Shown here in pieces: positions 210 through 32,929 of a stretch of DNA of 34,310 nucleotides. The notes under the pieces were generated by a model, which saw only the letters and a program-made list of their open reading frames with translations, did no database searches and was not told the origin of the DNA. A program made the translations under genes and the position numbers. The stretch's first letter is position 1, and every line of letters starts with the position of its first letter. Source of the DNA: Trichoplax adhaerens (Eukaryota; Animalia; Placozoa); the NCBI RefSeq assembly GCF_000150275.1, contig NW_002061001.1, forward strand, positions 1 to 34,310, in the 5' to 3' direction.

Positions 210-1327
210 CTTTATGCTTACATGCTGTAGTTTAGCCTTAAAATTATGGCACGTCATGAATAAGCTATGTCTAACTCAGATTGTCCAACTATATTTAATC
301 ATTGGTCATCCCAGTACAACCTAAACAATTGGCTTTTATGCAACAACTGTTTTAGGTTTCGCTTAAATTAATTTGCAGCAATAGGAAGGCTTGTGGAGTA
401 TAAACTAAGAATAAACTAGAAAATATTTCTAACTGCCTAACAAAAATTACTCTAGCTCCTTTAAGTCCAGCATTGCGTCTAGAATTTATTGGTGTAAGTA
501 CTTCCATTTTACTGCACTATTACAAGCCTACTAATAATTAATGTATGCCATGAAATTAAAATTCCTTTATCCTTAGTCGATTGCGGAGATGAAGATCAAC
601 TATCCTCAACTATCAGCCTATCTTTTTATCTCTATTCGTATTTCTAATCAAAATTTCAGAAAGCTTTGGTGTAGAGATGATGCATACTGTACTGTATAGT
701 AATGACTATTGCCAAGTCTGCGCCTTTTCGAATCTAGATTACCTATTTTAAGCCAAGGACATTGCATTCTAAATAAAAGCACCTGCAAATTTGGGGCAAA
801 ATTATCGTTAAAAAGAGAAACCCTTGTCAGATTAGATCTATAAACATTGATAGCAGATTACAATGTGGACTTGTATATTAAGTTTACAGCCTCTATTTCA
901 TACCGTTAAAAACATCTTTTTGGGAAGATATTCGGACTTTAGAATTGAGCTAGGTTACCCGCATTAGGTGCATTGACAGCATATGACAGTATGTACAAGT
1001 GCATCATGTTTATAGACTCTTTTTCGATGTCAATGCAGTCCCTTCTTAAATGACATTAGAACTTTATAATTGAACCAGATTAGCTACCTATGATCGTCAT
1101 CTTTTAGTGTATCCTAAAATGTTTCCCAAAGCCAGTAATACATTCAAAAGTTTTTTGTAGCATAGATAAAGTTAGTGGAAATTGATCCTTTTGAAATGAT
1201 GGTGTTGGATTGAAGAGCAATGAATTACTAGAATCATGGCGGAGCTATCTTCTTTGCCGGTAACTACTACATATTGGAAGTTAGTGCTAGATATATAATG
1301 CTAAAAACGGGCAGACCATTCATACAA

Positions 1328-1885
1328 CTAACATAAGAAGGAAAACCGACGAAAATAGAATACGGAGAAATTAGAGTTCGCAACTTGGCCATACTCTCAA
1401 TGAAGAATCGATAAAGTTATAACTCTATCTTAAGTCTAAATTATTATGGTATGCGTGCACAAGATTGTCAGACCCATTAATTAATTTATAGAACTAAGAT
1501 AGAAAGGAAATCGACGAAATTAGAATACGAAAAGGTTTCTCTTTGCAACTTTGCTGTGCTGTAATTGACGATTCGTCAAAATCAATATTATAAAATTGTA
1601 TTATTACTCTATATCAACGATAAATCCTTATAAAAAAATTGGCACATTCATCAATAGAAGTTGCAGAACCAACATAAAAAGAAAAGCTAACCAAAATAAC
1701 ATACGTCAAGAATTCAGTTTGTGATTTACTCTAAATTTTTATACAAGATTGACTGATCCAGTAATAGAGCTAATACAGAAAGAAAAATAGACGAAAATAT
1801 GAATACGTCGAAAATTCACTTTACGACTAGGCTATGTTCTAGTTGACATATCGTAAATTTTGCTGCTCTATCCTCAACGATTAAG
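1328..1885. repeat. Degenerate tandem repeat, 4 copies, irregular spacing of ~110-175 bp
   Basis: A core resembling A(C/G)ATAGAAAGGAAAxxCGACGAAAATAGAATACG..TT(C/T)GCAACT..ATCG..AAA recurs at ~1330, ~1497, ~1670 and ~1775. Confidence 0.65.
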
Positions 1886-2539
1886 TATCATTTTTACCCA
1901 AACACTGGGTCGAACCCCGACCGATAAAAATACCATATAAAGAGAATTAAGGATAAAAGAGAGATACTACTAGCCAAGGGTGGAAGAAATTGTTGTAGGA
2001 GTTATCAGGTATGTCAATGGGTGTTACGGTTTAAGATATTATTAATTAACAATAAGATAATTTTATTGAAGTAGAAATAGACGGTTAAGTTTAGATAATT
2101 GTAAATATTATGATCTGTTGCAAAAATTGTGATATTCAATCGTTAATGGACTTCCATTAAAGATTGTATAGAAGTAAGTTACTTAATATGCCAATGACGT
2201 GCAATAACCAAAATGGCGGTTGTCACCCTTGTAGGAAATCTGTTAGATCTTAAACGGATTTAAGTTGTTAATTGGGGCTATATTATTATTAGCTCATAAT
2301 ATCAATTAACACATATTTGTCTGATAGTAATCAATATGATTACAAAAGCTATAGAAAAGACTAAGTTATGTATAAGAATAATTAACAGCTTGCGAAGGTA
2401 TAGAATTGGTACAAGTATGGCTAAGTATATAAGGAGTTGTAATTTACCTCGCTCAGGAGAGGAGAAAAATACGGAGACCTAATAAGTTAGTTTAGTAAAT
2501 TTATCCAGACACTTCTAGTTCGCCTTTTACTGTTGACTG

Positions 2540-2915
2540 AGGTCCTCTGCTAAAGTAGAGTGAGTAACGACGCTTGGTGGCAGTTTTACTGTACGATAGA
2601 AGAGATTAGGATAAGCGTGGAACGGGAATTTTATTGTTTCAAACGACGTTGTGACAATGGGTAAAGAATAAACTACCTAGATGCCCATGAAGGAAGCGCC
2701 TATTACAATATTGCCGCTACGTTACAGGGGATCGCCATTGACATTTTGGGGAAGATAACCTTATCCGGTCTGGAAAGGAATATAAATTGAATATCATAGA
2801 CTAGTAGCATAGGTTCCAGGAAGCGATCTTCATAGCCTAGGCCGACGGTATACATATGGCATGGGAACTTGGACTGTTCTTCACTAGCTTAATAAGTGCA
2901 TACTTGTCCTAAGGC
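2540..2915 (+). mobile_element. Heavily decayed Gypsy-type integrase remnant
   Basis: LQGIAIDILGKIT at 2722-2760 (compare xERVAIDILGPLP) is preceded by an RL..QFYC remnant and followed by WHG/WTVLH*LN at ~2858-2893 (GPY/F-like). There are many stops and frameshifts. Confidence 0.5.
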
Positions 2916-4011
2916 TAAGATAGAGGAACTTCTAGAATATTGCTTTTCGGCTTCTCCAGCAGTTCAACTTTTGAACTTTAACGTTCTACTATTTGCTTTC
3001 TATATTGCCTCGGTAAAACAAGTACAATATGGATAGAAGGACTATTAATAAAAAATTAGCAAAAATCAAAGTACATAATGTGTATTGCATTGCAATGCTG
3101 GAGATTGGGGCAAAGCAAAGTGATGCCTTTCACAAATTGATAGAAACAATGTTAGGCCTTGCATTTCGTATGTATTACCGTATCTACCGTAGAAGAAACT
3201 ATAGCCATACTATAAATGAATATCGATTTTATTGCACCTAAATTGACAAAATTAAAAGTAATCCATAGGAGTGGGCTAGCAATTTTTTGATGGAAATACA
3301 CTTTCATGCGTGAGCTCATCGTGATCTATTATCAATTATCGAATTGAATTTGTATACTCGTAAAGGAAATTCCAATGCAATAAAGCTGAGATAGTGATAG
3401 AATGGCACAATTTCATGATATAATCTTTCAATACTAGTTTATTCACAAATAAAAAGGATTAAAATACTACAGAAAGTGATCAGCACCTGCATGCCTTGGC
3501 TACAGATTGGTTTAGTACTTCAATACTCTACTTTTACTTCTATCTCATCTAAAACATTGAATATACTCGTATATTGTTTAAAAATCATTTTGCTTCCCTG
3601 ACTTATTAATAATTGTTCATCTAGCTATTCGCCTACTTAGATAAGAATAAAACAATTTAGCTCACGATTAGTTCATGAGTACTAGTAATGAATATTCTAT
3701 TCGCCTGCTTGAGGCAATTATTGGATCCGTTAGCAAGAAATTACAAAATCATGGCAGCTTTTACAGGTATGTCAAGTCTAGGCTACGACTGGAAACTCCT
3801 GAAGTGGATTTTGATAACTGCGTGTCTGTATCTTCAAAATCGACATCTTGTTCTAGATCATAGGCAAATAGCAGAAAGTTAACAATGATCCAATACTGGT
3901 CTTTAATCACAGAAATAACATCACAATAACTACTGTACTTCTATAACCTGTCCTGCTTATTCGTTCTAATTATTTATTCAATTAAGTACTCTAGATGAAG
4001 GAAATATGAGC

Positions 4012-4061
4012 NNNNNNNNNNNNNNNNNNNNNNNNNNNNNNNNNNNNNNNNNNNNNNNNNN
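4012..4061. other. Assembly gap (50 N)
   Basis: Run of N. Confidence 1.
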
Positions 4062-4393
4062 ACCATACCATACAGACTTTTAGGACTACAACGATATAAC
4101 TGTACATAGAGTACCGGGTAGTGATGGATACTAATCAATAGGATATCGATTTCTGGATACATTAGCAATTTAAAACCGATAACTGCTACGGTGCCTTATT
4201 CAATTCTGCATCCATATACTGGGGATTGGAATCTTTTCATCAATTATACTCTATAGTATGGACTACTAGATGTAAAAGTATATCTAACAGTCGGCGATTA
4301 CAGTCATACTTTCGTATTATCTAATTGCTAACAATCAAAATTGAACTCTATTTTTGTCATCAGCATCGCCGCTATACAGCAGAAAACTAGATC

Positions 4394-7300
4394 TTAGTGC
4401 AAGGTTTCTAAATATTTGTTAAACATAAATAAATAACAACAGATCTACTTACGTGGAGCTGATATATGTGGACGTCGACAATATCGTTTGTAAAGGAAAT
4501 GAAGTAAGAATATTAGCAGTAGAGAAATTACTGTTGCAGCAATTGGCGCGAATATATGATCATTATTTGCGAAGCCATCTGGAGAATTGCTGCCATGATA
4601 GTTTAACGTAGTATTACTTAAACTGTTGTTAACATAAAGTTCATCCCTAAGTGACGCTAAAATATTAAAAACAAAGCTAGTTATGACATGTCTATAAAGA
4701 ACACGTTCTTATGTTCAACGCTGAAATGGAATGTAAGGAATTTAGTAATTTTTTAAAACTAATGAAGTAGGTATTGCTGCATAATATATCAAAGTAATTT
4801 TCTTCACATCGGTAGTAAGTATTTCCATCTCATGAATTAAAATTATATACAGCAATTATTAAATTTCAGCCTTCAATTATGACCGATATACTATACGATA
4901 TAGTACATTATAGCTCTGTGGCAGGAACTGTGGTCAATATCTTGTCTTATTTGGAGTAAAGTTATGTTTTAAATAAATCTCAGTTTCTAACGCAAGTTTA
5001 AGTGGCAGCTAAAATGAACACAAACTATAAATTTATGTTTTTATACCGATTTAAATTCAATCTTGAATTGCAAATACTGTTATGTTTGCTCATTTAGCGT
5101 GTAAATAGTGATAATAATGGTTTATATTGCCGTTGGCAATTTCATATTAAGCTATTTAAAAGTATCTTTTCTCACCTGTTTGAAAATATACCATTTTGCT
5201 TGGTTTACTTCTGCCATAGATGCTTACGGTGATGATATATAACTGGTAAGTGCTATTGTACTGTAAATTGGTGAGAATAGTCGATATTTCACTTGAATTA
5301 ACAATTTGCATATCATAAATACTAGAAGAATTTGTCCTATAGTAGACAGCAAATCCTGTTATATCATCGCCAAAGTTACTTTTCCGCCATCGAATTATAG
5401 CGGCTCTATAAACGGTGCCTTGGACGCTAACATTTCTTGGAGGATTGGGCAATTCTAATTGTAGTGTTTCATAGGTTAAAAAATCGCAAATTAATTAGCT
5501 ATTGATGGAATTATTTTATAACAAACTTTTACATCATTTTACGTATGTAACGGCCATTAATATGTTATGACTTAGTAAATTAAGGATGAGTACTATACCT
5601 TTTGTTTTATAAGATGCCCATTCGCTGTACGTAATGCCCACTTTACTAATAGATAAGATTTGAAAATTGTACATTGTTCCTGACTTTAAACCTACAAGTC
5701 GCGTAGTTATAGAATTACTGGCTGAAAGGTTAGATACTCCTGTTATTTCCATTTTGATGCACAATGAGCAATTAAGCGACGATGGATATCGTTTTTGTTG
5801 ATGATTTTCAATAAACTGAATATAAGATGTTAAGTTAGCTAGTTTGAATAAGTTATTAGCATAGCTTTCAGATTTCCAAGTAATATTCAATTCAGTCAAT
5901 GAAGATGAGATTGCAGTCAGAATTGGTTTGGACGGTAAGCCTGTAATGTGATTTATATTTAGATTATAAAAGTATCAAATAGTACAGTGGAATTAGTTAT
6001 AGAACAGCCTCTATAAATAGCCCGAAGTCTACACAAAATTTGCATAAAATAGATGTACTACAACTATGCTTTAAGTTGTCATACCTATCGTATTTAATCT
6101 CTTTATCTGACTGCTGCTTGTACCAAAGGCATTTGTTGCTTGCAACTTAAAGTCATAACTACTGCCTTTCGTTAAGTTTGCAATATGTACATATCTAACT
6201 GAGATATTCTGCTTTTGCAAGGACTCTTCTTGGTGATCTGTGATCAACATTGTCAGCCATTTGTTCGATGTACTTTGCTTATAACTGAAGCTATAAGTAA
6301 TGTTGGTTCCATCATGTAAATTTAATGCTTGCCATTCCAACACCACAAAGTCAATATTATCGGTTATCTTTATGATTTGGGGACTAATTGGCATACCTAC
6401 GTTAAAAGTAATTTCGAACAATTACTTACCACCATCATTCACTACCATAAAGTTACTAAAGCCTACATTATGCTAGTTTTTACTGAGGTGTGTATACTAA
6501 ATAATAAAACATTCAAAATAAAAAAAACGATTTCAGGCAGCTAAGTATTGTTAAGTAAGACCTTCATGCTAGCCTAATTTTATTTATTGACAAGTATATT
6601 TTACCTTTCATCGTGATTCGAATCTTGGAACTATTACCGCTTCTTCCGTAGTCATTAACAGCTTGTAACCAAAAATTATAAGTAGTCCATGGTTGTAAAA
6701 AATTAATTTTACATATCGTATCATGACAGGTTTGATAGTTAATAGTAGATACATTAAAGTTTTGGCTTCTCATAGTCGTATTAGTAGGTTTACTCATGGC
6801 TTGGTTAAATATAAGGTAGAATAATCCTTTCGCTAATAGGCTGTAATCGGAATTAATGAAAATAATCAAGTTGGTATTTGTTACATTCTTGACCGTTATA
6901 TCTGTAATATTTGCTGGCGGTGCTAAATGGTACAAATAGCATCTGTCAATTTTTGAAAGCGTAATACTGAATTAATTTATTGTAATACAGGAATGTTAAT
7001 CCTTTTACCTCGAATGATTATGTTAATATTAATTCTTTCATTTCCATATGTGTTATTAGCCATACAATAGCAAAGACTGGAATCATGAAAACTTGCTTGG
7101 ACGATTTGAATAGTAGAGTCATTAATTTGAATTATTCCATTTAAGTTTTTGTTATCTCGGTTGCCACAGTTTAGCCAAACTATAGAGGAAGGAAAACTTT
7201 CAGCTACACAAGTTAACGTTATATCGTCGGTATGGTTGACCAAAAGACTCGAATTTAAATGTATCATTTTATTTATAGTTGGATGTTTGGTATCATGTAA

Positions 7301-9915
7301 TGTTATGGAAAGTTTGGGAGGTCCTACAATACAAAATAATAGTTAACCAGTAGCACTAGATATTAATAAACTACAACACTGAATAAAATCCGATTCCACA
7401 ATTTCAGAAAACTAAATGTCAATCAATAAAAGTAAGCATACATCAATGTAATCGTAATTGGATGCCAAATGCTCGTAAGAAATATTGTAAGGAAAAATGG
7501 CTTTAAAAATATTTTTAAATTATTCTATGCTATTATACCTTTAATCTTGACGTTGAAAACTCTATCATAACCTTGATTATAAGCAGATAGGCCACTCCTC
7601 AATATATACTTTCCCTTGTTATTATACTTTGCATCTAGTATACATAGCTGACTAAAGTATGTACCATTTGCCATTATCCCAGTAGAAATACAGGTATTCT
7701 GCTGTATGTTCTGTATTTCACGATTATTGCCAAAATAGCAAGTTGAGTTTATTACTTTATTATTGAAATACCATGAAGAGAGTATTACATAGTTTCGGAT
7801 GGCGCCAATATTGAAATTTATACAGTATTTTGTGCCATAAGGCATTACAATGTCATTTTGTTGACTGGATGGGATATTTAGTGTAGGTATTACTTCTGGA
7901 AAGAAAAGTTCAATCATTTGCTTAAAGTTGATAAATATCGAAATTTAAAATGTTTTGTCATTTAAGCTTGACATTTGAATTTTATCCTGCTAATTTATTG
8001 ATTTTTAAAAATTAGTTACACGAGTAATTTAAATGATCAAGACTTTTCATTTTAATCCGACAACGTAGAATTAATATTTTCCTTTATCATATTATTTCTG
8101 AGGTAGATATATTATAAGTTTTACACTGACTATATAGCAATATTTAGCTTAAAACATCCTGTGATCTAGATTGAATACTATTCGCGTTTATAAACGATCC
8201 AACGAAATACTATTTTGAAATTCCGAACTAAAAGCGCAATAACTTCAATTACAATCGTATTCTACTTTACATAGATATTATACCACCATTAAGGTATTTA
8301 AAATATAGTTTAGATAGTCACTGAAACTACAATCTTTCGATAATACAAACTTGTATCGCACAAAAGTCCGGTGTATCCAGAGGCGAGACATTTGCACTGA
8401 AAACCATCTTGTAAATTGTGACAATAACCAAAGCGGCAAGGATTTGATTCACAAGGTGAAATATCTGTAAATCGTAACGATTAAATAAGTCAAATAATAT
8501 AGTCCAGTACACAATCTTACGAATTTGTTACAATATCTGCATGTTCTATGCTGAACTGCATGGAATACCCAAAGTTCTGATTGAATAGATGAGAATTTAA
8601 AACTTTTATTTTTGCTATTTAAATTAAATATTCTAGGCATTCAATGTCTAAGATTACAAATAAGTTTTCTTCTGCAATTACTATGCTTAATTGCTTATAT
8701 CTGTTTATGCTAAGATCAGATACTAGTGGCTACTAAAAAAATATTGTCACTATAAAGTTACCGTAGATTGCTCTAGTCGTACATGTGATTTTAAAATTTT
8801 ATTCGTAGATTGAATAAGATTTATATCGCTAAACTTTATGGATTTCGTGATATTCATTTTAAAAATTAATCTATGTCTCAAATAGAACAGAAACAAAATA
8901 AATTGACTATAGATATTTATATGAAGGAAGTCGTTTAATTTCTATCTAGCTAATAAATAAGAACAAAATTTGACTTTATCCCTATTTAATATAATAGATA
9001 TTTCTTACTGCTAATCACAGCTGTAATAAAACTTTCTAGGGTAGTTATGAATATTTTACGCCTTGTTTATTTCGAAAACTTTTACCAATTTCGCAGTGCT
9101 TTCCTGTTCGATAGCGTGGACATAAACACGTATAAGACCTTGTTCTATGGCTTATACATGTAGCGCTTCCGTGACATGGCATTGAAGTACAATAATTTCC
9201 TACGGAATAGTTTTTTGACACAAAGAAATAAACTCATTCTAAATGCAATTAGTAGTTGAACATCCTATTCTTGACTGGTAATCTGACTCTAATTGCAAGT
9301 GTTTATAATCTAATTTACATAGAATTTAAATGTTGATTAGCAGTACCGACTTACTTATCTCGCAAATTTCGCCAGTAAAAAGTGTAGGACATCTGCAAAC
9401 GTAACTTGATGATTTTGTTTTAATACAAGTGCCACCATTCATACAGCTTCTTCCCATATCGCAGCTTATAATAGCTATATTAGCAGAAAAATGAATTAAT
9501 GCTATAGAGCCATGCGGTCAAAGACAGTCTATAATATTGTAGATTTTCCGCTATTTATTCTATTATGATAAATAAGGCAACAGCTCTACTTGCATCTGTT
9601 GCATGTCCTTCCTGACCAGTCGATAGGACATTGACATCGATATTCAGTTTCAGAAATATCATGACAGGTTGAGTATATATGGAGGCATGGGGAAGAGCTG
9701 CACGGTCCACAGATTGCTGAAAATAATATATGATTGATTGGAGATTTGAATGCAGATATAATAATTACAATAACCGTATTTTAAATCATGAGATGGAAGC
9801 GCTATTGATATTGTATGAGATGAGTCCAAATCATGGAATAGCTATTACCTGTATTAAAATGAACGGCGAGAACGAACAATGTACACCAAACAACAAAAAC
9901 TTTTGAACTGATCAT
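4394..9915 (-). CDS. Multi-exon single-pass cell-surface protein: SP-EGFx4-Igx2-FN3x4-TM-short cytoplasmic tail (~890-900 aa)
   Basis: Exons assembled by hand on the minus strand: 9915-9849 (MISSKVFVVWCTLFVLAVHFNT, signal peptide); 9716-9594 (EGF1 AICGPCSSSPCLHIYSTCHDISETEYRCQCPIDWSGRTCNR); 9474-9355 (EGF2 ..CDMGRSCMNGGTC..CRCPTLFTGEICE); 9199-9086 (EGF3 ..CTSMPCHGSATC..CLCPRYRTGKHCE); 8464-8351 (EGF4 ..CESNPCRFGYC..CKCLASGYTGLLCD); 7895-7539 (Ig-like); 7323-7009 (Ig, LTC..W..DSSLCYCMANN); 6922-6605, 6396-6085, 5940-5599 and 5454-5176 (FN3, e.g. LQPWTTYNFWLQAVNDYGRS, LTKGSSYDFKLQATNAFGTS); 4656-4453 (stalk, TM IFAPIAATVISLLLIFLLHFLY, then KRYCRR). All 11 introns between these exons are phase 1 and every internal exon is a multiple of 3 (123, 120, 114, 114, 357, 315, 318, 312, 342, 279, 204). 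The 3' end is ambiguous: read-through stop at 4445, acceptor 4407 (QTLH*, stop 4394), or acceptor 4371 (stop 4328). Confidence 0.88.
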
Positions 9916-11413
9916 GGTCTAAGTATTGTTTGGAAAGTTTTAGCTTTTGATGTTGAAGTGATTTAACTTTCGGATCGAGTGATTCGGCGTTATTAACCTG
10001 ATCCCAACTTAATATAATGAATAATTCAAATTGGTAGAATAACCAAATTTGTGATGAAATGATTTTACATGGAGAAGTCAGTTCTTCTACTGTAAAATTG
10101 CTACTTTTAGCCAATGAAAATAGCAAGATTCTTTGAAAAGCTGATATTCGAATAAAGCAATAAGACCTTTCTATTCAAACTAGCATCTTCTTTAGATCTG
10201 TTCAAGCCATAAAATGTAGCCGTCAATGTACAGTATATCCATAAATTGAATAAGGCGAAAGGTGTAGCAAATTAAAAGGAAATGACGTTGTATAATTGAT
10301 TATAGTAAACATACCTGTGTGACTTATAAGGCAGATATCAAAACATCTATACTATTTGCGGCAGATAGAAGTAATTCAATATCAAGCTAAATAAAGTTTA
10401 CTGCATATTCTATCCTCTTTATAACCTAGGATTAGAGTAATAGCGGAACTGTTTTGTATTGACTTTATTTAGTGCAGACAATACTGTCGTTTGTAGATTT
10501 GCTAAAATACAGTAGGTCTGAGTTTTTTTTTTCATCCTTGATCTAAATTTAGTAGACAGAACAATTTCTTGCATTGAGGCCAGAGAATATAATTAGGTAT
10601 TTTTCAATTTTAGCCATCTCTGCTATAATATTTTCAACTTATTATGAACGCTATGAATTTTAGGTTTGGTTTTGTACGTTAAAGGGACTAGAAGCCATTA
10701 TCCGCATTCCTAATAAAGCGGTAATAAAGTAATACTTTTAGCAGTTTCATATACGGTTACGGAATATTATGCCTATCGTAAGCTAACTTGAGTGGCCTTT
10801 ATTACAATAACTTTATACTATATGATTAAATGATAGCCTTAAAACCTAGGATTAATGATGCTAGCATACCGTACTGAGTCAATCGACTCTGGTCTATCAC
10901 ATTCTGCATAAAACTTGAATAGCTCCTTATGTGGCCCAGATAATAGATAGGAAAGAATTTACTCAAAATTTCTTTTGCATCATATTCTGAAAAAACTCGG
11001 CTTTGTGGCTCTACTAACTAACAGGAAAGAATTATGTAACGATTTCCTTTGCATCAGTACTAGATTTTATATTCTGGCATTTAAGCCCGGCCAAATAATT
11101 ATAGTCGGAGAATTACTAGAAAGCTTTTTTCACGTTTTTCTAGTCGATAAGCCTAGTATCGAGTTGTGAACTTTGAGGCGAAATGCAAAAGGAAGAATCG
11201 AGGAAAATATGCGCGAAGGGAATTTGATATTTGATACAAAGCATAAACAGTTTCTTACGTAGTTTTCTAGATTAATTGCAACTACATGGGCTTATTTCCA
11301 CATTCAGTGTCGAAGGTATGCCCACAAATGGCATAAAAGCAAATAAGTACCAACATAGAAGCGCTACCGTGCAATTAAGTAAGTTAGTAATTGTATACTG
11401 CTTTCAAGAAAAA

Positions 11414-11576
11414 TGTAAACGTTTCCTTACATAAGGAAATAAACCTATAAGACGAGTGTATAAGAATGTAAGTTAGACAGATTAATGGAGATTTAGATTA
11501 GTCAGACGTTCGATTATTCTTGTTGAAGATGATCATGAACTCCCTAATCTGTTAATGTATGATGATGTGGCTGTGT
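11414..11576. repeat. Dispersed repeat copy 2 (truncated)
   Basis: Same orientation as copy 1 and 157/159 identical to positions 2-160. It begins TGTAAACG. Confidence 0.85.
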
Positions 11577-12646
11577 CTCTATATGCAACTGCGAATTTTA
11601 TGATATAACAATCATCAATGCACAGATTATTATCATGTTATCGAAGCTAGTAAAGACTATAGCCTATCATCAACAAATAAAGCAGGCTATTTTTTAGCTA
11701 GCCGGAATAATTTTGATCTAATACTATTATATCGTTAGAAACAAAGTTGAATCAATTCTTATTGAAACATTAATCACATTTCCTAACCAAGATATTTGTT
11801 TCTATTCATTTATCTTACCCACGTAGGTTCTGTGTCGAATAGATGATAGGGGTTCTATTTTGATCATTTTCGTCATTATCATTTTTAAAGGCGTTTATTA
11901 CAATTTCTTAGTTTAATTAATTAACTTATGCAAAATGATAGCAGTTTCATACTAGAATCGTTATTTAAAGCCGTTCAATTTTTAGCTATTATTGCAATTC
12001 TACTTCTCTTACAGTTCAATGCGTGATCAATATTGATAATACACATTATATTCAACGCTATCAAGTATTATGGTATCAGACAAAGTCATTAATATGGGTT
12101 GTTTTTCTCAATAAATTATCTTGGTAGCAACATACAAAGTTACGTGCTTGAGCAGTCATAATAGAAGAGTCTTATTGAATACCATTTATCAGCAACTGTG
12201 TCAGCTAGACTTATTTCCTTCAGTATTGGATTAAATAGAAATGGAGGATTCCTAGGCGAATTAGAATAACATGTATCAATCCATTAATATCGTGCTTCGT
12301 ATTCTAACATTTTTTCAGTATTTTACTGAATTAAATTTCTAGTGCGTCAAGTCGTTTGCTCAAGTGCTGTAAGTAGTATCGCATGTTGATGCTAAAATAA
12401 TTTCTACCTATAGTAGCTCATTTTATGTGCCATTAAACTTGACTATATTGCGTATGTAGACTCTATATTGCTTGGCTACGGTATCATAACGGACTAGGAT
12501 GGTACATAATATAAGAAGGAAGTATAGATAGAGTGCAGTGTTGGGCATATTATTGAGTTCCATATCACTCAGTAAAATGAATATTAACATGAAACACTAC
12601 CGTACCAATTATAGGTTTTAGTATTTGAACAATTTTGGCATATTGG

Positions 12647-13993
12647 TTAACAACACAGTAGAATGAATACTAAAATGAGATTAAAAAATTTTCCATCGTA
12701 AATGTCTTGCTGTGTTTCTTCTTCGTTTGCCCTAGCAACATAACTCAGGCAACTCTTTAGGCCATAGTTGTAAGATTTCTTAATTAAAATATGTTGGGCG
12801 TAAAGAAGAAAAATTGGATACAGATTCACTTACACGGCTTGGCTCTTCCTCTGCATTACTGGAATTGTACAGAATGAGTGCTAATAAGCACCCCATTAGT
12901 GCTAATGCGCCTGTGATTAGCAAAACTTTCAGTATTAAAAGGTCGCTAAAATTCGCAGTAAATTGCTTGCTTCCATTATCAGACGTTTTATTTTTGAAAC
13001 CGTTGGCACTGCGTTTACCACTAAGAGTCGATAATGCTAATAATAAATAGAACAAGGCAAATGAATAAATTGTTTTAATTAAATAGACATATCGGCTTCT
13101 TTGACAGGAGTAAGACTTTGAAAGTATTTGATGAGCGAGATACAGGCATGTCTAAGTTGGCTAATTCATGCGTTACATGCTGTATTTGTTAACTGAAAGA
13201 AATTTATATTTAAGTAACAGTGATGGCAATTTACTGTAGGACAGTAAATTAAATTGGGAAATTTGTGAAAAATCAAGATTATCATTTTACGGTATAATTT
13301 GAATTGGGATTAGAGAAATTTCGAAAGAACATAATTTGAAAATAATTCGTACCTGTTAATATTTTGCTAAAGTATTCAAAAAACTATTATGGCAGATCTG
13401 TCTTAAGTAAGTAACTTACAGTAGTATCTTGTAAGTATCAATAGCAAAGTTTTATTATCTAGAAGATAGATCAATTATTTCAAGGCAATGTAAAATGCCA
13501 TTTACTACAGTGAGTATTAGGTAAGTAGCAATTTTCAGGGTTCTATAGCTACATACAATATTAGTAGCAGTTAGTCTTACGTATTTACTTTTTACAACTG
13601 AGTGATTTTAAAATTTCTCGGTAATTTTGACCATTTCTGAAATTATATTATGCGTATTACTTACTTTCATCGCATATCCTACCAGTCCAGCCATTAGGGC
13701 AAATACATTGATATTGTGTGGGGGAGATATGGTGGCATGTTGCATTGATATTTACACATGGCGATGAACTACACGGCTCACAAAAAACTAATAAAGGATT
13801 AAACCATTTGAAATCGATTTAATTAGTGCTCTACTATTACTATTAATTAATCATCGCTACATGGGTTGATGGTGGATCTATTTTACAAGAGATTAGTTGT
13901 CTACAAATATTAATAAAATTTACCTAAATCAAATTGCCAAACGACAATAGTAAGAGTGTATAAAATTGTTAAAACTCTCGGAATAGTGATCAT
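12647..13993 (-). CDS. Small membrane-anchored single-EGF protein, paralogue A (~175 aa; SP-EGF-stalk-TM-tail)
   Basis: Exons: 13993-13924 (MITIPRVLTILYTLTIVVWQFDL, G|gtaaat); 13787-13665 (VFCEPCSSSPCVNINATCHHISPTQYQCICPNGWTGRICDE, A|gtaagt); 13036-12834 (stalk and TM LLILKVLLITGALALMGCLLALILY, CGT|gtaagt); probable last exon 12778-12647 (KSYNYG...LILVFILLCC*). Splice sites are canonical GT-AG and the frame is open. The last exon is the least certain. Confidence 0.8.
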
Positions 13994-14725
13994 GCTCTTC
14001 TGATAGGTTTTCGAATTCCCTTTTGCGAAAATAACTTTTTGATTACTTGATCCTTCCTTTTCAACCTGTCTTGTATTCGATACCTCGACAGATTACTCTT
14101 GACAGGATATCCAAGTATGTCTAACGGTGGCGTAAGAGAGTGTTTATGACACTTATACAGCTCTCTATAATTGGTTTATGTCTATCAATAATAACATATT
14201 GAAACTTGATCATTTCACATGCTTGTTCAATTCGAATATTTAGATAGTAGAATTACAAATTCAACTGCATGACTATGTAAAGAGGTATCACTAATCATGT
14301 TTGGAACGGCTACTGACTTTTTAGCTCCATTTACCTAGTTATAAAATGGGAGGTTATACTGTAAATTGATTCTTGTTGAAAGGAGAAACACTTCATCAGC
14401 AAGAGGTTATATGTAACATTTTGCTTTCGCCCTACCATACATGCGAATAAACACATAAGATCTATCTTAAAAATTTGGGCAATGTTCATAAGATCTATTG
14501 AAATAATAATTGGCTAAACTGTAGCCAAGTACACAAAAGTTGATGTTGGTTAGCACATACATTTTCAACCCAAATGAGACTTCTATCAGAAATTTTACAA
14601 TCATCATTACATTATCTGCTTTATACTCAGAGTACATCCTAGCTACTGTAACTTTAGTAGTGTACAGATTTGCATGCATGAAATAAACTAAAACAACAAA
14701 ATTTTTTATTATAATATAATGATTA

Positions 14726-14962
14726 TTGCTGAGTGATCATCCAATAAGTGCATATACGATTAATGGAAAGCGTGCAGGATCAGTTATTTCAATACCTCGG
14801 ATAGTACTTATATTTGCAGATTCCGATCTTCCTGTTCATCTAATACAACGCCAGTTTCCTATTAGACCAGCATTTGCTATGGCTATTACTAAAAGTCAGG
14901 GCAAACATTGAATAGGTTAGCTTTTTACCATGGCCAATTTTACGTTGCTGTTTAGTCGTTGT
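14726..14962 (+). mobile_element. Helitron (PIF1-like helicase) C-terminal fragment, decayed
   Basis: IPRIVLIFADSDLPVHLIQRQFPIRPAFAMAITKSQG, then after frameshifts TLNRLAFYHGQFYVA and FSR. This matches the Helitron/PIF1 motifs RRQFPxxxAFAMTINKSQGQTL...FSHGQLYVAxSR, with a short internal deletion. Confidence 0.9.
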
Positions 14963-14997
14963 TACGATGCGTAAGCTCGTTCTAATTATAAATTTAG

Positions 14998-15859
14998 AAT
15001 CCACCATCATGGCAGACTGTGGAACGCAATATGTTAGTGAAACTTTCAAGGAGAGCTGCAGATCGGCAATATTGCCTTGAAGTTCAGTTCACCATATCAT
15101 CATCAAGTCAATAGTGCAGCTGATAGAACCATTCGAAGAATCAAAACGCTATGGAAGAAAGCATTTAAGAGGAAGGGAAATACCCATATACAGCACTATG
15201 GTCATACAGGATAACACCTTTAGATAACAGTATATCATCTCCATACGAACTACTTTACGGACGAAAACCTCAAACGCTTTTACTAGCTTGCAATAGAGTC
15301 CCACAATCACAACACCCTGACAATGAGTACCACCAAGAAGCTAATGAAAGGATTCAGGAAAACAAAAAGTTTTCTACGATAAAGGTACGGGAATAGACAA
15401 GAAATCATTTAACAATAAGAAATTAGTTTACGTAAGTAACACACAGCAAAATATCTGGGAGCCAGCTACGGTACTCAAAAGACCGAATCCCATTGGGGAA
15501 CCTCGAACCTATTTAGTTAATATCGGAGGAAAAATAAATCGTAGAACAAGAGAACACATCAAACCCAGAGCCATGGAAACACCATCTCTTTACCAACCAT
15601 TGGAACCTACCGTAGCATCTAACGTCTTACAAACCCCATTGTCAATAAGAAGACAAGATAGCATTTGTGATACACTAGCCAAATCTAATCAATCACAAAT
15701 ACAACACACGATAGCACATAAAATGCCGCCTATTTGGACTCATTCCCCATCGAAGGAACCCATATTAGCAACTAAGAAAGAGAATGTATCTATAAACCTA
15801 ATAGCCAGATTACGAGAGTTGGAAAAACTACTCGTGTACCTTTGAAATTTCTAGATTAA
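14998..15859 (+). mobile_element. Decayed Ty3/Gypsy (Mag/K02A2.6-like) integrase core and C-terminus
   Basis: Frameshifted motifs occur in the expected order: TIMADCGTQYVSETFKESC (second catalytic D region), SSPYHHQVNSAADRTIRRIKTLWKK, ALWSYRITPL..SPYELLYGRKPQTLL, KQKVFYDK, WEPATVLK..EPRTYLVNIGGKINRRTREHIKPR, and terminal TRVGKTTRVPLKFLD*. ORF 15573-15845 is part of this fragment. Confidence 0.88.
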
Positions 15860-15962
15860 AGGCTAACCTGATAACTCGCGTTTTGCCTACTAAAAGAATG
15901 ATTAAATTGTTATACGAGTAATTGCGTTAGCACACAACCTGTAACTGCACAGCTTGTTTGAT

Positions 15963-16134
15963 AAAGAGGCGGATGTCATAGTATTAGTAGAGCGACTTCG
16001 TAAGGGTAAGTCTTAGATGCGCACGTATTTGAAGTTCATTTGCATGTAAAACCTTCTAGAATACTTAGTCTATGTATACTATAATAACCTACGTTCCTTA
16101 TTTTTGCTTTGATTGAGAATTTTATTCTGCCACA
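15963..16134 (+). mobile_element. Polypurine tract and probable 3' LTR of the Gypsy fragment
   Basis: AAAGAGGCGGA is immediately followed by TGTCATA (LTR start 15974), about 115 bp after the pol stop. The LTR end (..GCCACA, 16134) is a guess. Confidence 0.5.
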
Positions 16135-17044
16135 ATGGTGATCGTTATGATGCTATCAAAGGTAGTGTAGGCTACAATTTAGTATCAGCAAATTATGGCG
16201 AATGATTTAAACGTAGTCATTGTAATCCATAAATTCTATTAACATGCAGTTGAGTTCTTTTCCGGACATTATCATAGCAACTCTTTCTAATTACACATTT
16301 TTTTCTGTTCATTTCACAATCCCAGGTACAATTGATATCATGCAGAAAATGCTAGTGAAATATATATAGAATCTTTTATTTTTACGCAAACATTTGTTAA
16401 AATTTCATAGCTTACAGAATAAATTGACGATTTCATAGTAGAATAGAACTATAGTCATTTTACAGAATCGAAAAATGATGTAATAAATACAGTGCTAAAC
16501 ATAACAGTAATTTATCTCGAGGTTTCTCATATGATACATAACATTATGCATAACTACTGCGTAATGAACGAGTCTTCATATAAGCAATACAATTTTAACT
16601 CTTGTTGCATTGTACTTATATTTATTTCATTACATAATCGGATTGAGAGTAACCGTTGCTTGAAGTGCCTATAGATACAGTAGCATTGCAGTAGGCAAAA
16701 CCATAGTAGTCTTTTTCTTATAGGAATTATCTTTTAAACCACATGTCATCTTGTCTACAATACTTTATTAGGCATATTCATACTAAACATTTTTTATTTA
16801 ATGAGTAAAAATCATAATAGCAGAATACAAGGTGTCATCTACAACTTAATATGTTGACATAAACAGTAATGATAAGGATACGAAATCACTATTAAAGTAA
16901 AACTATAATATCGGCGCTGAGGATTATACCCATCTTTCAACTGTTTGGACTTCTCTTCTGTTATAATCTGCAATCTTTATTTGAACAACAAAGTCAAATG
17001 CGTACATTAGAAAAGCAATAGAAATAGATTGAGCATGTGATAGC

Positions 17045-17688
17045 ATAAAGTGCCATCCTTACTAAGCTGACCTACATCGAAAATACTATATTAAATACTC
17101 TAAAAGTTTTAGTTATTTCTGAAAGTGATTGGATGCGCCTATAGAAAGATGCAATAAGGTAGCTATACAATAGGTAGTTACTGCATCACATTGCCCTAAA
17201 GCGAACAAGCCTAATTTCTCCATCTTGCTGAAATACTATAGTTAAGAGCTATCTAAACTACTAAAGGTGCTTTTGCAAACTACCAAATTTTAAATTTATT
17301 TCTTAGTTACAGTATAGTAGCTTACAATGGGTATGTTTGCTTTAGATGAGATGCAGTATTTGATATATTGTTCAGTTCACATCAATAGTAAAATAAAGCA
17401 CTATCCTTACTAAGCTGAGGTACATTGAATGTACTATATTAAATTCTCTAAAATTTTTTAGTTATTCAAGAAATCATGAAATATCTTTGCTTAAAGGTAC
17501 ATTAAGGCAACTATGCAATATTGATGTCAACTGTAGTTAAGAACTATCTAAACTGCTAAAGGTGCACTTGCAATCTACTAAATTTCAATTCATTTCACGG
17601 TTACACCACAGTAGCTTACAATAGGATGTGTGCTTTAGATAAGATGCAGTTATTGATATATTAATTCTGTTCACATCATTAGTAAAAT
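17045..17688. repeat. Two-copy tandem duplication (~348 bp + ~296 bp) 3' of paralogue B
   Basis: ATCCTTACTAAGCTGA, CTATCTAAACT(A/G)CTAAAGGTGC, GTAGCTTACAAT and TTCACATCA(A/T)TAGTAAAAT each occur twice in the same order. Copy 2 has a ~50-bp deletion. Confidence 0.85.
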
Positions 17689-17864
17689 TGAATATTAGTA
17701 ATTACATTACTATTTTTAATTTGATAGTAGAAAATTGTTGGTATATTTATACATGTCTGCACGCTGACCACTCAAGTGCTATCAAGTTATGTTGCACGTA
17801 TTGTATTTTACATTGCATCTTCTTATATGACATTATTACCGCATGCCTCGCTATTTAGACCTGA

Positions 17865-18892
17865 TCAAGGTTTCTATTTAAAAATACAGTAGGCAGCACG
17901 AAAGAATGAACAATTATAATGCATTTACTTACAGCATGTAGCTGCCGACTAATTTTGTTAGAATTGACCACGCACATTGCTATTAACAAAGCACTTATTG
18001 CTATTAAGACGATGGCTACGAAGATTTGCTGTTCATCCGTAAGACGGTTGTCAATATTTGGCGTGGATTGTTTGTTTTCATTTTCAGATGTGGTATTTCT
18101 TGAATTGTTACTATCGTACGCTGTGCCAAGTAATGCTATAATACGAAAATGTAAATTCCGTTATTGAATAAAACAGCACCATGATATCTCGATACTGAAT
18201 AGGACATTGATAAGCAGTTTAAAGATTCCGGAAGCTATATTACTGTCCTGAATGGGCTATTAATAATTAATCGGACACAATGTCTAAAATGGTTTGTTGC
18301 AGAAAGCATGTCTAATAGTTCGCAAAATTATAAATTCTTAGAGTGGTTTAACCATCACTTGAATTAGCAGGTATTCATGAAATAAATCAATAACTACTTG
18401 TAACTCGTCGATATAAGGGCAATGAATAAATCATAGATGAACAAAAAGTTATTTAAATTCGTTACTATAAAGTAATGAGTGAATAATATGTAAAGTGACA
18501 TTTTAAATTTTTTAGCTCAATCTTACAATTTCTTAAGTTCTATTATTTCTTACTTTCATTGCATGTACTATCCTTCCAGTCTTTAGGGCAAAGGCATTGA
18601 TATTGTGTTGCAGAAATATCGTGGCATGTTGCATTGATGTGTGCACATGGTGATAAATTACATAGCCCACAGAAAACTAATGATTGATTAAGCCATTTGA
18701 ATTCGACACGATTAGTATCTATTACCGTACAACTAGTAATTAATCATTACTATCTGTATTAGTGCTACATCTATACATATGCTGCAGAAGATTACTTCTT
18801 CCAAAAAAGTTTAAAATTTTACCTAAATCAAATTGCCCAACGACAAAAGTGATGGTACATAAGCTCATTAACATTTTTGAAATTCTGATCAT
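17865..18892 (-). CDS. Small membrane-anchored single-EGF protein, paralogue B (~134 aa; SP-EGF-stalk-TM)
   Basis: Exons: 18892-18823 (MIRISKMLMSLCTITFVVGQFDL); 18676-18554 (VFCGLCNLSPCAHINATCHDISATQYQCLCPKDWKDSTCNE); 18135-17933 (TLLGTAYDSNNSRNTTSENE...QIFVAIVLIAISALLIAMCVVNSNKISRQLHA|gtaagt); probable last exon 17873-17865 (KP*). The first three exon lengths (70/123/203) are identical to paralogue A. Confidence 0.8.
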
Positions 18893-21109
18893 GTTCGGTT
18901 TACAGATTTTCGATTTCCTTCTAGTGAAATATGACTCCTTGATTACTTGATTTTTTCTTATAAAGGCACAGTCTCCCTTTGAAATTCTTAAGATGGATAC
19001 GATATTTATCTGGTTCACCATATAATGGTACGAAATAGAATCTTTTACACTCGTATAATACTATATTTGGATGATATCCATATATAAATTGGAACTATAA
19101 AAGCTGATCAATTTTATGTGTGTCATAAAATTATAACGAACGTGGATGGCTAAATAAAGCGGCATGGCGCATCTAAATTAAACTCTTACTGGTTTTAAAA
19201 TCTAATTTACATCATAAAATGATACGTTGCTCCATCAGAATTAATCATAAAAAAAATTCCAAATGGTAGTACATTCAATTTAGGATTGTAGTGTCCGGCA
19301 TCTTATGGATAATTCCATTATGCATTATCAGCATTAAAGAAATGACGATTGCATGTCGTAATTGATAAAAGTTATTTATAGTCTATGTAATATTCAGAAA
19401 TTTAGGCATTATTTTGGCCTAAATAAAAAATTTATACAATTATTAGTCAGACCGTGTATAAGGTCTACTCGTAGCGAATATAAATTTACTGCAATTGAAA
19501 TAATGATTAGGCAAGGCAGTTATTTGCATTAGAACAACTTATATAAAATAATAAGTAATGTATTTCTTATTCAGCTTTATGTTTCAAAATAATTTCCTAA
19601 AGTACAGAGGCTCTAATTTATGTATTCTATTTGGTATGATTATTCCTATCAGATCTGTGGAATACTTGCTACAAATGAATCGTCCCGTATTTGTGCTAAG
19701 ATCCTTAAATTGTAGCTGGTATTTTGCATTTTGGCATAGGTTTCTCTTGGCGACCGGGAATCAATATTTCGGCTACGTACCTTATTTGATAAACTTTGTT
19801 TATAGCTAATGATAGAAATATGCGTGCTGCTTGATCCATAAGTTTAATTTGATACTTCAGTTAACGGGTAATGCTGCGAAAATAACAGTACACGTATCTG
19901 CTATCTACATAATTTTGAGATGAGATAAATCTACTACGGTCTAATTCAAATAACGAACTATTTGTTATGAGTGGAGTTTTTATATTATTCTAGAGCAGCT
20001 ACTGTCCATAAAAAATATGACCATATTATTTGAAGATTAATTGAATGCATATTGTACCATTGCTGTAAATCATATTTTGCGTTGCTGTCACTGTTTCAAT
20101 CATCATGAAAAATACGGTTAAAATACAAGTCGTCTTTGGCTGTAAAAGGTCAATCTGGTAAATTATATGAGAAACACTTTAATTAACAGAAAAATAATAA
20201 AAGTATTGATCTTTTGATAAAGTCGATAAAACAAATGATCTTCTGGTAGGAGATATGATCAAATAAAATTTAAATTCAATTTAACTTGAATATAATAGCA
20301 TGTTGGTATCATTTCATTTACTTCGAATTATCACATTGAAAGTAGCCGTTTCATTCTCTTTCTTGATTACCATTACGGTAGTTGTTACAGCAATTACAGT
20401 TAAATACTTAAGCCGAGAAGATTTTTAAGCTAACTAGATTTATACCTCGAAATGATTACTTGTTTCAAACAATTATAAACTTACTTTCTATATTAATTAA
20501 ATTTTTAAACATCAGAAATATATGCTAGTAACAATTGTTATAATAGTTGCGATGGACTGCACTAGACGATTATATTAAACTACATGTGCATGATGTAATT
20601 GGTGCATACGCAGATAAATATTGCACTTTAATTAGCGAATTCACCATGTTTCCTTCTCAGTGCAATAGAAATAATCAATAAATGGTAATATAAAGATCCG
20701 TTTCATAATTAATTTAATTATTCTTTTCTTGGACTATTTTGATAAAGGTAAATTCGTTCAATTATTTTACAGTGACGATCAAGTAATTTTCCTCAAAACT
20801 AGAGTATTTTTATTTTAGACCCTGAATACCATTTAAATATCAACGCCATATCTGCTCTCTATCTTCTAATTTGATCAACTTCCCAACTATAAGTCCATTC
20901 CATTTGTTAGATATTTTAACCGTTCTACTTCGATATATTTGCTCACAAGTCTAATTGTATAGAAATTTTGATGAAGGGGTAAAGTGAATGAACTCTACTG
21001 ACTAATTTTGAAGTGAAGTAACGCGAATTAAAAATTCTTACGAAATATTATTTAGAGTAAAGGGTTAGAACAACGTCAAATATTAAATTGCAACCGATTA
21101 ATCCTAGCT

Positions 21110-32879: not shown

Positions 32880-32929
32880 NNNNNNNNNNNNNNNNNNNNN
32901 NNNNNNNNNNNNNNNNNNNNNNNNNNNNN
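32880..32929. other. Assembly gap (50 N)
   Basis: Run of N. Confidence 1.

What the first reader, a model, noticed from the sequence alone, without database searches (positions are those of the whole stretch)
4394..18892. Tandem cluster of one large EGF-Ig-FN3 receptor and two miniature single-EGF membrane paralogues built from its first two and last two exons
Seen: three same-strand genes share a signal-peptide exon (67/70/70 nt), a 132/136/146-nt intron, an identical-length 123-nt EGF exon (23-25 of 41 aa identical pairwise, hand count) and a 204/203/203-nt stalk+TM exon. The TM exons align, e.g. NSLSNTT..IFAPIAATVISLLLI vs NNSRNTT..IFVAIVLIAISALLI. The following acceptor is also homologous (tag|AAACCTTG, aag|AAATCTTA, tag|AAACCTTG). 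The two small genes lack the nine internal exons (EGF2-4, Ig x2, FN3 x4). Established: symmetric phase-1 exons can be gained or lost without a frameshift. Inference: this is a lineage-specific surface-recognition family that displays a related N-terminal EGF on either a long stalk or close to the membrane. It could act as a receptor/decoy pair, a receptor/ligand pair or an allorecognition-type set. I do not recognise this architecture set as a named family.
Basis: partly seen in the sequence, partly recalled or inferred. Interest (0 to 1): 0.85.

Follow-up and report, generated by a model that had tools for sequence, protein, structure and literature searches.

The report
Placozoan EGF receptor with two mini-paralogues
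On a small Trichoplax adhaerens scaffold, a large EGF/Ig/FN3 cell-surface protein lies next to two transcribed, unannotated mini-genes that keep only its signal peptide, first EGF domain and a stalk-plus-membrane anchor; this is a tidy case of in-frame exon loss, and its function is unknown.

Summary
The core observation holds. Three minus-strand genes share a 67/70/70-nt signal-peptide exon, a 132/136/146-nt intron, a 123-nt EGF exon (57-60% aa identity) and a 204/203/203-nt stalk+TM exon. All lengths are exact.

- **RNA support.** Spliced RNA-type contigs join 13924|13787 and 13665|13036 in gene B and 18554|18135 in gene C. No hidden exons appear.
- **Shared character.** The three N-terminal EGFs carry a seventh Cys. 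It is absent from 145 other EGF-pattern matches in the loci held.
- **What fails or is weak.**
  - The "homologous acceptor" after the TM exon is not used. B splices to 12251 (tail of 6 aa) and C to 16974 (tail of 16 aa).
  - TM-exon homology is significant only for B-C, marginal for A-C and absent for A-B.
  - Only one of the two "Ig" exons matches an Ig model.
- **Identity.** The genome is Trichoplax adhaerens. The large gene is TRIADDRAFT_62466, whose public model is N-terminally truncated. B and C returned no protein in two size-limited searches.
- **Polarity.** A collinear paralogue on contig C1408 shows that the large architecture is older. The mini-genes most likely arose by loss of nine phase-1 exons.
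- **Function.** Untested. The receptor/decoy, receptor/ligand and allorecognition readings all remain open.

The same stretch was noted once before in this scan (s1-783623), with a variable-cassette reading that the RNA contigs do not support.

The parts
9849..9915 (-). Gene A exon 1: start codon plus signal peptide (67 nt, ends in phase 1)
   Evidence: Read directly. No RNA evidence obtained for gene A.
9594..9716 (-). Gene A exon 2: EGF1 (123 nt) with an extra Cys 3 residues before C1. The donor is GC (gcaagt). Unspliced read-through would stop after 2 codons.
   Evidence: Pfam EGF 26.6 bits; sequence; extra Cys.
8351..9474 (-). Gene A exons 3-5: EGF2 (9474-9355), EGF3 (9199-9086) and EGF4 (8464-8351), all phase 1-1
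   Evidence: Splice-site scan. Pfam EGF at 36.3, 26.7 and 25.6 bits. EGF3 and EGF4 pair with the same positions of paralogue A2.
7539..7895 (-). Gene A exon 6: 118-aa all-beta domain, Ig-like by position only
   Evidence: No Pfam hit. AF2 pLDDT 68 with nine strands. No significant PDB match. Weak match to the same position in A2 (E 4.6e-4).
7009..7323 (-). Gene A exon 7: Ig domain
   Evidence: Pfam Ig_3 30.5 bits against cut-off 30.
5176..6922 (-). Gene A exons 8-11: four FN3 domains (6922-6605, 6396-6085, 5940-5599, 5454-5176)
   Evidence: Pfam fn3 at 27.0, 23.8, 18.7 and 43.9 bits. Collinear with A2. The public model P0001 uses these exons, with a shorter exon 10.
4453..4656 (-). Gene A exon 12: N-glycosylated stalk, TM helix and basic stop-transfer (204 nt, ends in phase 1)
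   Evidence: Sequence; hydrophobic window at residues 34-54; included in P0001.
3761..3852 (-). Gene A probable last coding exon (30-aa acidic/Ser-rich tail), as in the public model.
   Evidence: C-terminus of P0001; acceptor and stop read. No RNA evidence. The intron spans the N-gap 4012-4061.
13924..13993 (-). Gene B exon 1: signal peptide (70 nt)
   Evidence: Joint 13924|13787 in contig record 20 of run X9.
13665..13787 (-). Gene B exon 2: EGF (123 nt)
   Evidence: Pfam EGF 22.6 bits. Joints on both sides in RNA-type contigs.
12834..13036 (-). Gene B exon 3: stalk plus TM (203 nt, ends in phase 0)
   Evidence: Joint 13665|13036 in runs X9 and X10 with 0 mismatches.
12004..12251 (-). Gene B exon 4: 6 codons plus stop (12251-12231), then 3' UTR
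   Evidence: A 248-nt loose end at 12833 in run X4. Its 30-mer maps to 12221-12250. Acceptor tag|g read.
18823..18892 (-). Gene C exon 1: signal peptide (70 nt)
   Evidence: Sequence. 56% aa identity to B. Lies outside the stretch laid with reads.
18554..18676 (-). Gene C exon 2: EGF (123 nt)
   Evidence: Pfam EGF 22.0 bits. Joint 18554|18135 in runs X4 and X5.
17933..18135 (-). Gene C exon 3: stalk plus TM (203 nt, ends in phase 0)
   Evidence: records 13 and 17, with 0 mismatches.
16394..16974 (-). Gene C exon 4: 16 codons plus stop (16974-16924), then 3' UTR
   Evidence: Joint 17933|16974 (skips 958, GT..AG) in runs X4 and X5. Contigs reach down to 16394. Sequence read.
13605..14059 (-). 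5' module of B that still aligns at DNA level with C (18500-18959): upstream region, exon 1, intron 1, exon 2 and the start of intron 2
   Evidence: blastn 72% identity over 467 nt, E 3.5e-64. Intron 1 is 65% identical against 45 +/- 5% for random pairs.

Best explanation
This is a small Trichoplax adhaerens-restricted family of type I membrane glycoproteins in tandem.

Gene A is TRIADDRAFT_62466. Its true N-terminus is probably 9915, and it would encode about 918 aa if the public last exon is right. Its order is signal peptide, four EGF domains, a beta domain, an Ig domain, four FN3 domains, a glycosylated stalk, a TM helix and a short tail.

Genes B (138 aa) and C (148 aa) are separately spliced transcripts. 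Each encodes signal peptide, one EGF, stalk, TM helix and a very short tail.

Inferred origin: an A-like gene was duplicated, and the nine internal exons were removed in frame because all are phase 1-1. The mini-gene was then duplicated again (B-C dS about 0.5, intron 1 still alignable).

Inferred mechanism (low confidence): the mini-proteins display the family-specific N-terminal EGF, with its unpaired seventh Cys, close to the membrane. They would engage the same partner as the membrane-distal tip of the large protein. They could therefore act as membrane-tethered competitors or modulators, or as juxtacrine EGF-type ligands, of an adhesion/recognition system.

The confidence given covers the gene structures, paralogy and direction of change. 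The functional part alone would be about 0.25.
For: - Exon anatomy and lengths.
- Domains.
- Spliced RNA-type contigs with canonical ends and 0 mismatches for B E1-E2-E3 and C E2-E3-E4. No loose ends at the EGF-exon donors 13665 or 18554.
- EGF1 exons of A, B and C are 57-60% identical (E 1e-13 to 1e-14; E 3.5e-11 and 5.3e-11 genome-wide).
- They form a clade in the maximum-likelihood tree with support 75/76.
- They alone carry a Cys at -3 of C1: 3 of 148 EGF-pattern matches.
- B-C: EGF dN/dS 0.39, which indicates purifying selection. Intron 1 is 65% identical and the DNA aligns over 467 nt.
- TM exon: same length, same phase and same TM position. B-C p 0.001 and A-C p 0.014.
- Paralogue A2 on C1408 is collinear (EGFx4, two beta/Ig exons, FN3x4, one stalk+TM exon of 222 nt in phase 1-1). 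A_EGF3 and A2_EGF3 pair with support 98/82. The large form therefore predates the A/B/C split.
- Organism and public model.
- The ESM Atlas feature search places P0001 among Ig-FN3 adhesion molecules.
Against: - Gene A's 5' half (exons 1-6) has no RNA or annotation support. Exon 2 needs a rare GC donor.
- TM-exon homology between A and B is not detectable. B-C TM exons (54% DNA identity) are more diverged than their intron 1, so the 3' halves may have a different history from the 5' module (gene conversion or exon shuffling).
- The EGF tree rests on 35 columns. The nearest unrelated EGF repeats reach 54-57% identity, close to the 57-60% within the trio.
- The last exons of A, B and C are unrelated.
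- There are no functional data of any kind.
- Logan contigs cannot show rare isoforms.
Confidence: 0.7

Rival explanations
1. The SP-EGF cassettes at 18892, 13993 and 9915 would be alternative variable first modules, each with its own promoter, spliced onto the constant body of gene A from exon 3 at 9474.
For: All donors and acceptors are phase 1, so such joints would be in frame. The cassettes are on the same strand, in tandem and upstream of the body. B and C share an alignable upstream region.
Against: RNA-type contigs join each cassette to its own TM exon and its own 3' exon. No contig leaves the stretch at 13665 or 18554 (tables 5, 7 and 8). Each small gene has a complete 3' end.
Confidence: 0.07
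2. B and C are membrane-anchored EGF-type growth-factor precursors, like TGF-alpha, Spitz or neuregulin. The EGF would be shed from the stalk and signal to a receptor unrelated to gene A. The shared EGF would reflect ancestry only.
For: The architecture and size match such precursors: signal peptide, one EGF, a stalk of about 33 aa, TM helix, short tail, 138-148 aa. That resemblance rests on my own knowledge.
Against: The Cys spacing is C-x4-C-x6-C-x9-C-x-C-x8-C, the Notch-repeat type. It is not the CX7CX4-5CX10-13CXCX8C of EGFR ligands (translations). The nearest relatives are matrix/Notch-type EGF arrays. No EGFR partner was examined.
Confidence: 0.12
3. The small genes were assembled by exon shuffling. 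A duplicated promoter-SP-EGF module landed in front of unrelated stalk+TM exons, so the similarity of the TM exons to gene A's is coincidental (composition and length).
For: A-B TM similarity is absent (p 0.22). There is no DNA-level hit between any TM exons, and the genome-wide search finds only self. B-C similarity stops about 60 nt into intron 2. The last exons are unrelated.
Against: Lengths of 204/203/203 nt, identical entry phase, and TM helix starting at residue 34-36 in all three. B-C p 0.001 and A-C p 0.014 under a domain-preserving shuffle. The same single stalk+TM exon design occurs in A2.
Confidence: 0.2
4. B and C are transcribed relics of partial duplications with no function of their own.
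For: They are very short, their tails are unrelated, no protein model turned up in the size-limited searches, and a retroelement remnant lies between them.
Against: The reading frames are intact. All joints seen are canonical GT..AG. EGF dN/dS is 0.39 with all seven Cys kept. Contigs were recovered from two coded organisms and two studies.
Confidence: 0.1

Closest known systems
Ig-FN3 cell-adhesion molecules (NCAM/fasciclin-2, DSCAM, contactin, turtle)
   Same: An Ig domain followed by FN3 repeats, a single TM helix and heavy N-glycosylation. These are the nearest clusters by protein-language-model features (0.95-0.96).
   Different: Four EGF repeats at the N-terminus, only one certain Ig domain, and a very short tail. 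No sequence-level orthologue was found.
Tie1/Tie2 receptor ectodomain
   Same: Mixes Ig, EGF and FN3 modules in one type I ectodomain (from my own knowledge).
   Different: The order differs: Tie is Ig-Ig-EGFx3-Ig-FN3x3. No kinase is present. P0001 carries only Ig and fn3 families, and the open frames downstream of the TM exon looked unremarkable by eye.
Membrane-anchored EGF-family ligand precursors (TGF-alpha, Spitz, neuregulin)
   Same: The mini-genes have signal peptide, a single EGF, a juxtamembrane stalk, a TM helix and a short tail, at about 140 aa.
   Different: The Cys spacing is of the Notch-repeat type. There is a seventh Cys. No evidence exists for shedding or for a kinase receptor.
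Clustered protocadherin/UGT1-type variable first exons
   Same: Tandem, same-strand, promoter-bearing 5' cassettes lie upstream of a large body, with compatible phases.
   Different: Each cassette has its own TM and 3' exons, and the RNA contigs show that these are used.
Paralogue A2 in the same genome (G000:C1408, about 389-395 kb)
   Same: Collinear: SP, EGFx4, beta/Ig x2, FN3x4 and a single stalk+TM exon in phase 1-1.
   Different: Identity is 26-54%. There is no seventh Cys. It has a long Ser/Thr/Asn-rich cytoplasmic region with YxxI/V motifs. No mini-genes were seen in the 10 kb held.

Membership tests
EGF-like domain (PF00008) | Six-Cys EGF pattern with a score above Pfam's curated cut-off (21.5 bits) | tested here: met
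   A exons 2-5 score 25.6-36.3 bits, B scores 22.6 and C scores 22.0.
Ig-FN3 adhesion-molecule class | At least one Ig-superfamily domain followed by FN3 repeats in a type I membrane protein | tested here: met
   Ig_3 at 30.5 bits. fn3 at 27.0 and 43.9 bits (above cut-off) and at 23.8 and 18.7 bits (below). TM helix in exon 12. Atlas neighbours.
   No Pfam hit. The single-sequence AF2 model is all-beta with pLDDT 68. The best PDB matches have E 8e-3 or worse and TM 0.46 or lower.
Tie receptor tyrosine kinases | Cytoplasmic tyrosine-kinase domain | tested here: not met
   The public model ends 30 aa after the TM exon and carries only Ig and fn3 families. The short open frames at 1-4452 looked unremarkable by eye and were not run through Pfam. 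The contig ends at base 1, so a distant exon cannot be formally excluded.
EGFR-ligand family (EGF/TGF-alpha/Spitz) | Single EGF next to a TM helix in a small type I precursor | tested here: met
   Exon models plus RNA joints.
EGFR-ligand family (EGF/TGF-alpha/Spitz) | Cys spacing CX7CX4-5CX10-13CXCX8C (recalled consensus) | tested here: not met
   The observed spacing is C-x4-C-x6-C-x9-C-x-C-x8-C, with an extra Cys at -3.
EGFR-ligand family (EGF/TGF-alpha/Spitz) | Proteolytic shedding and receptor activation | not testable with these tools
   Needs experiments.
Clustered variable-first-exon loci (protocadherin type) | Each variable cassette is spliced to shared constant exons | tested here: not met
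   Contigs join B and C EGF exons to their own TM exons. There are no loose ends at 13665 or 18554. Rare isoforms cannot be excluded from contigs.
DSL Notch ligands (Delta/Jagged) | DSL domain with tandem EGFs | tested here: not met
   Only sub-threshold hits to JAG1-like_EGF2 and EGF_DL_JAG, within the EGF itself. No DSL domain was found.
Allorecognition-type loci | High allelic polymorphism of the exposed domain | tested here: inconclusive
   There are 0-1 differences across C's exons and 1 in 62 nt of B's exon 3 between the window and contigs of a second coded organism. That is only two sources, and no population data exist.

The most novel reading that the evidence does not exclude
The mini-proteins and the large protein form one recognition system built on the family-specific EGF with its unpaired seventh Cys. 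The short forms would pair with the tip of the large form, possibly through a disulfide, or compete with it. Cell-cell adhesion or self-recognition in an animal with very few cell types would then be tuned by the ratio of long to short paralogues.
Probability: 0.12. Interest if true: 0.7.

Novelty: new variant of a known kind. Interest (0 to 1): 0.4.

Why it matters
Placozoans are among the simplest free-living animals, and their cell-surface recognition molecules are almost uncharacterised.

This locus corrects a truncated public gene model. It adds two expressed genes for which the protein searches run here found no public model. It also gives a clean, RNA-supported example of how symmetric phase-1 exons let a large modular receptor collapse into a minimal 'tip plus anchor' protein.

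If the long and short forms share a partner, the locus would be a simple system for studying how receptor/decoy or ligand pairs originate. Without functional data it remains an ordinary lineage-specific duplication with domain loss.

Tried and rejected
- **Protein search with the B and C stalk+TM exons.** I used open frames without stops and restricted scoring with 'region'. Nothing was found. Only proteins of about 56-215 aa were eligible, so this says little.
- **Protein search with the public model P0001.** It returned only itself.
- **HMMER of exon 6 against 1.84 billion representatives.** It returned only P0001 and one insignificant hit.
- **Genome-wide search with C's TM exon.** It returned only itself.
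- **Exon 6 fold.** The single-sequence AF2 model and a Foldseek search of the PDB gave no significant match.
- **Pfam on other frames.** No hits for A2's cytoplasmic frames, the ORF between B and C, or the 539-aa ORF.
It was tested as an intronic homology signal and is not robust.
- **EGF tree for polarity.** It gave only moderate support.
- **Literature.** No paper names TRIADDRAFT_62466 or this architecture in Trichoplax.
- **Earlier scan notes searched by words.** Nothing was found.
- **Complex prediction.** I did not run it, because I do not claim binding and have no likeliest pair.
- **Joined spliced proteins.** I built no joined spliced protein for any search or fold.
Full report
**What is in the sequence**

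Gene A:
- a 67-nt start/signal exon (9915-9849) and a 132-nt intron;
- a 123-nt EGF exon (9716-9594);
- three further EGF exons (9474-9355, 9199-9086, 8464-8351);
- two exons of 357 and 315 nt (7895-7539, 7323-7009);
- four exons of 318, 312, 342 and 279 nt (6922-6605, 6396-6085, 5940-5599, 5454-5176);
- a 204-nt stalk+TM exon (4656-4453).

All internal exons are multiples of three and phase 1-1.

Gene B has exons 13993-13924 (70 nt), 13787-13665 (123 nt) and 13036-12834 (203 nt). Gene C has exons 18892-18823 (70 nt), 18676-18554 (123 nt) and 18135-17933 (203 nt).

Without splicing, the frame stops two codons later.

**Domains, searched exon by exon by reference**

- Pfam finds EGF above its cut-off in A exons 2-5 and in the EGF exons of B and C.
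- It finds Ig_3 (30.5 bits) in A exon 7.
- It finds fn3 in A exons 8-11. Two hits are above the cut-off and two below.
- Exon 6 has no Pfam hit.
  - A single-sequence AlphaFold model is all-beta (pLDDT 68).
  - It has no significant PDB neighbour.
  - So 'Ig x2' is confirmed for one domain only.
- The stalk+TM exons have no family. Each carries 2-4 N-glycosylation sequons and a hydrophobic 21-mer starting at residue 34-36.

**Is the similarity more than chance?**

*EGF exons.*
- The three are 57.5-60% identical over 40 aa. E is 1e-13 to 1e-14 within the window, against 1e-3 or worse for EGF2-4 of the same gene.
- They are the top three hits in the whole 105.6-Mb genome.
- The margin is not large. 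Trichoplax has big arrays of a similar EGF subtype that reach 54-57% identity. A 35-column tree groups A, B and C with only 75/76 support.
- The better argument is a shared derived character. All three have a seventh Cys three residues before the first canonical Cys. None of the 145 other EGF-pattern matches in the loci I held has one.

*Signal exons.* B and C are clearly related (56%, E about 3e-4). A is not detectably similar to either.

*B against C at DNA level.* They align over 467 nt at 72% identity. The alignment runs from 66 nt upstream of the ATG, through intron 1, to about 60 nt into intron 2. Intron 1 is 65% identical, against 45 +/- 5% for random pairs. EGF dS is 0.49 and dN/dS is 0.39.

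*A against B or C.* Synonymous sites are saturated.

*TM exons.* This is the weak point. Under a shuffle that preserves the stalk, TM and tail compartments, B-C gives p 0.001, A-C gives p 0.014 and A-B gives p 0.22. There is no DNA-level hit, and C's TM exon finds only itself genome-wide. Homology is still the better reading, for three reasons: the lengths of 204/203/203 nt, the identical entry phase, and the identical placement of the helix. It is not proven, least of all for A-B.

**Transcripts**

*Gene B.*
- A 324-nt contig in run X9 reads 13998-13924 | 13787-13665 | 13036-12911 with 0 mismatches.
- Run X10 repeats the second joint.

*Gene C.*
- Contigs in runs X4 and X5 read 18598-18554 | 18135-17933.
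- In X5 the contig continues to 16974-16763.

All skipped pieces have GT..AG ends on the minus strand.

The step after the TM exon is different from the prediction.
- C's donor at 17933 joins 16974, skipping 958 nt. That exon gives 16 codons and a stop.
- B's donor at 12834 joins 12251. The 248-nt loose end maps there. That exon gives 6 codons and a stop.
- The proposed mini-introns of 45-59 nt ending at 4407, 12778 and 17873 are not seen in B or C.
- The motif similarity there is not robust.
- A contig of equal depth also reads straight through C's donor (17660-17962). An unspliced or alternative 3' form therefore exists.
- No contig leaves the stretch at the EGF-exon donors.

By adding exon lengths, B encodes 138 aa and C encodes 148 aa.

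**Identity and annotation**

HMMER of exon 6 against 1.84 billion representatives finds one real hit. It is a 582-aa protein that starts inside exon 6. The cluster look-up names it TRIADDRAFT_62466 / XP_002118430.1 of Trichoplax adhaerens, on a 34,310-base contig, which is this window.

- That model lacks exons 1-5 and uses a shorter exon 10.
- It ends in an exon at 3852-3761, giving a 30-aa tail. The acceptor was read.
- Searches with the stalk+TM exons of B and C returned no protein.
- P0001 finds only itself among 5.8 billion proteins.
- No paper mentions the gene.

**Polarity**

A genome search with exon 6 pointed to contig C1408. There, a collinear paralogue (A2) carries a signal exon, four EGF exons, two beta/Ig exons, four FN3 exons and a single 222-nt stalk+TM exon in phase 1-1.

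- A long Ser/Thr/Asn-rich cytoplasmic region without Pfam hits follows.
- A_EGF3 and A2_EGF3 pair with 98/82 support. The large architecture is therefore older than the A/A2 split.
- A2's EGF1 lacks the seventh Cys. B and C therefore branched within the A lineage.
- The parsimonious history has three steps. An A-like gene was duplicated. Nine phase-1 exons were lost in frame. The mini-gene was then duplicated.
- The alternative cannot be excluded: A could have captured its 5' module from a mini-gene. The 5' and 3' halves of B and C have also diverged very unequally.

**Function**

Nothing here tests function.

- The ESM Atlas feature search places the public model among Ig-FN3 adhesion molecules.
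- The mini-genes look like membrane-anchored EGF-ligand precursors in layout. Their Cys spacing, however, is of the Notch-repeat type.
- My best guess is that the short forms present the same tip EGF near the membrane. They would then compete or cooperate with the long form for a common partner. The unpaired Cys is a candidate for disulfide pairing. I give this about one chance in four.
- Allorecognition is not favoured by the little variation seen: 0-1 differences across C's exons in a second coded organism. That is not a population sample.

**Verdict**

The anatomy is real, and the two small genes yield spliced RNA-type contigs. The 'last two exons' claim and the Ig x2 claim need correction, and TM-exon homology is only partly supported. 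This is a lineage-specific variant of a familiar theme (modular adhesion receptor plus truncated paralogues). It is of moderate interest until a function is shown.

Noticed in passing
G000:C1408 about 389,100-395,400 minus strand (L037 1-5400, L034 9138-9998): A collinear paralogue (A2) of the large gene. It has a long Ser/Thr/Asn-rich cytoplasmic region with several YxxI/V motifs and no Pfam hit, so it could be the signalling member of the family.
   Followed up: partly
window 15169-15842 (+): Open frames that look like the C-terminal part of a retroelement integrase (my recollection; no Pfam hit at E 0.01 or better). RNA contigs there carry many differences, so they come from other copies.
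   Followed up: partly
window 29542-31158 (-): An uninterrupted 539-aa open frame with no Pfam hit, unusually long for this intron-rich, AT-rich genome.
   Followed up: partly
window 9585-9594 (-): Gene A's EGF1 exon ends at a GC donor. Read-through would end the protein two codons later, giving a secreted signal-peptide-plus-EGF product.
   Followed up: no
window 17660-17962 (-): A contig of the same depth as the spliced one reads through gene C's TM-exon donor. This is either a retained intron or an alternative 3' end that would add 25 different residues.
   Followed up: no
G000:C1409 1.82-1.93 Mb and 4.26-4.40 Mb: Two very large arrays of one-EGF-per-exon repeats of a 'H-x-Y-A-T-C ... D-W-T-G' subtype, the nearest EGF relatives of the A/B/C tip EGF.
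   Followed up: partly
window 14959-14996: Very short (31-60 nt), high-depth contigs in all four runs, with unlike sequence on both sides. Probably a repeated or low-complexity word.
   Followed up: no
window 4012-4061, 32880-32929, 33200-33249: Assembly gaps (runs of N). The first lies inside the last intron of gene A.
   Followed up: no
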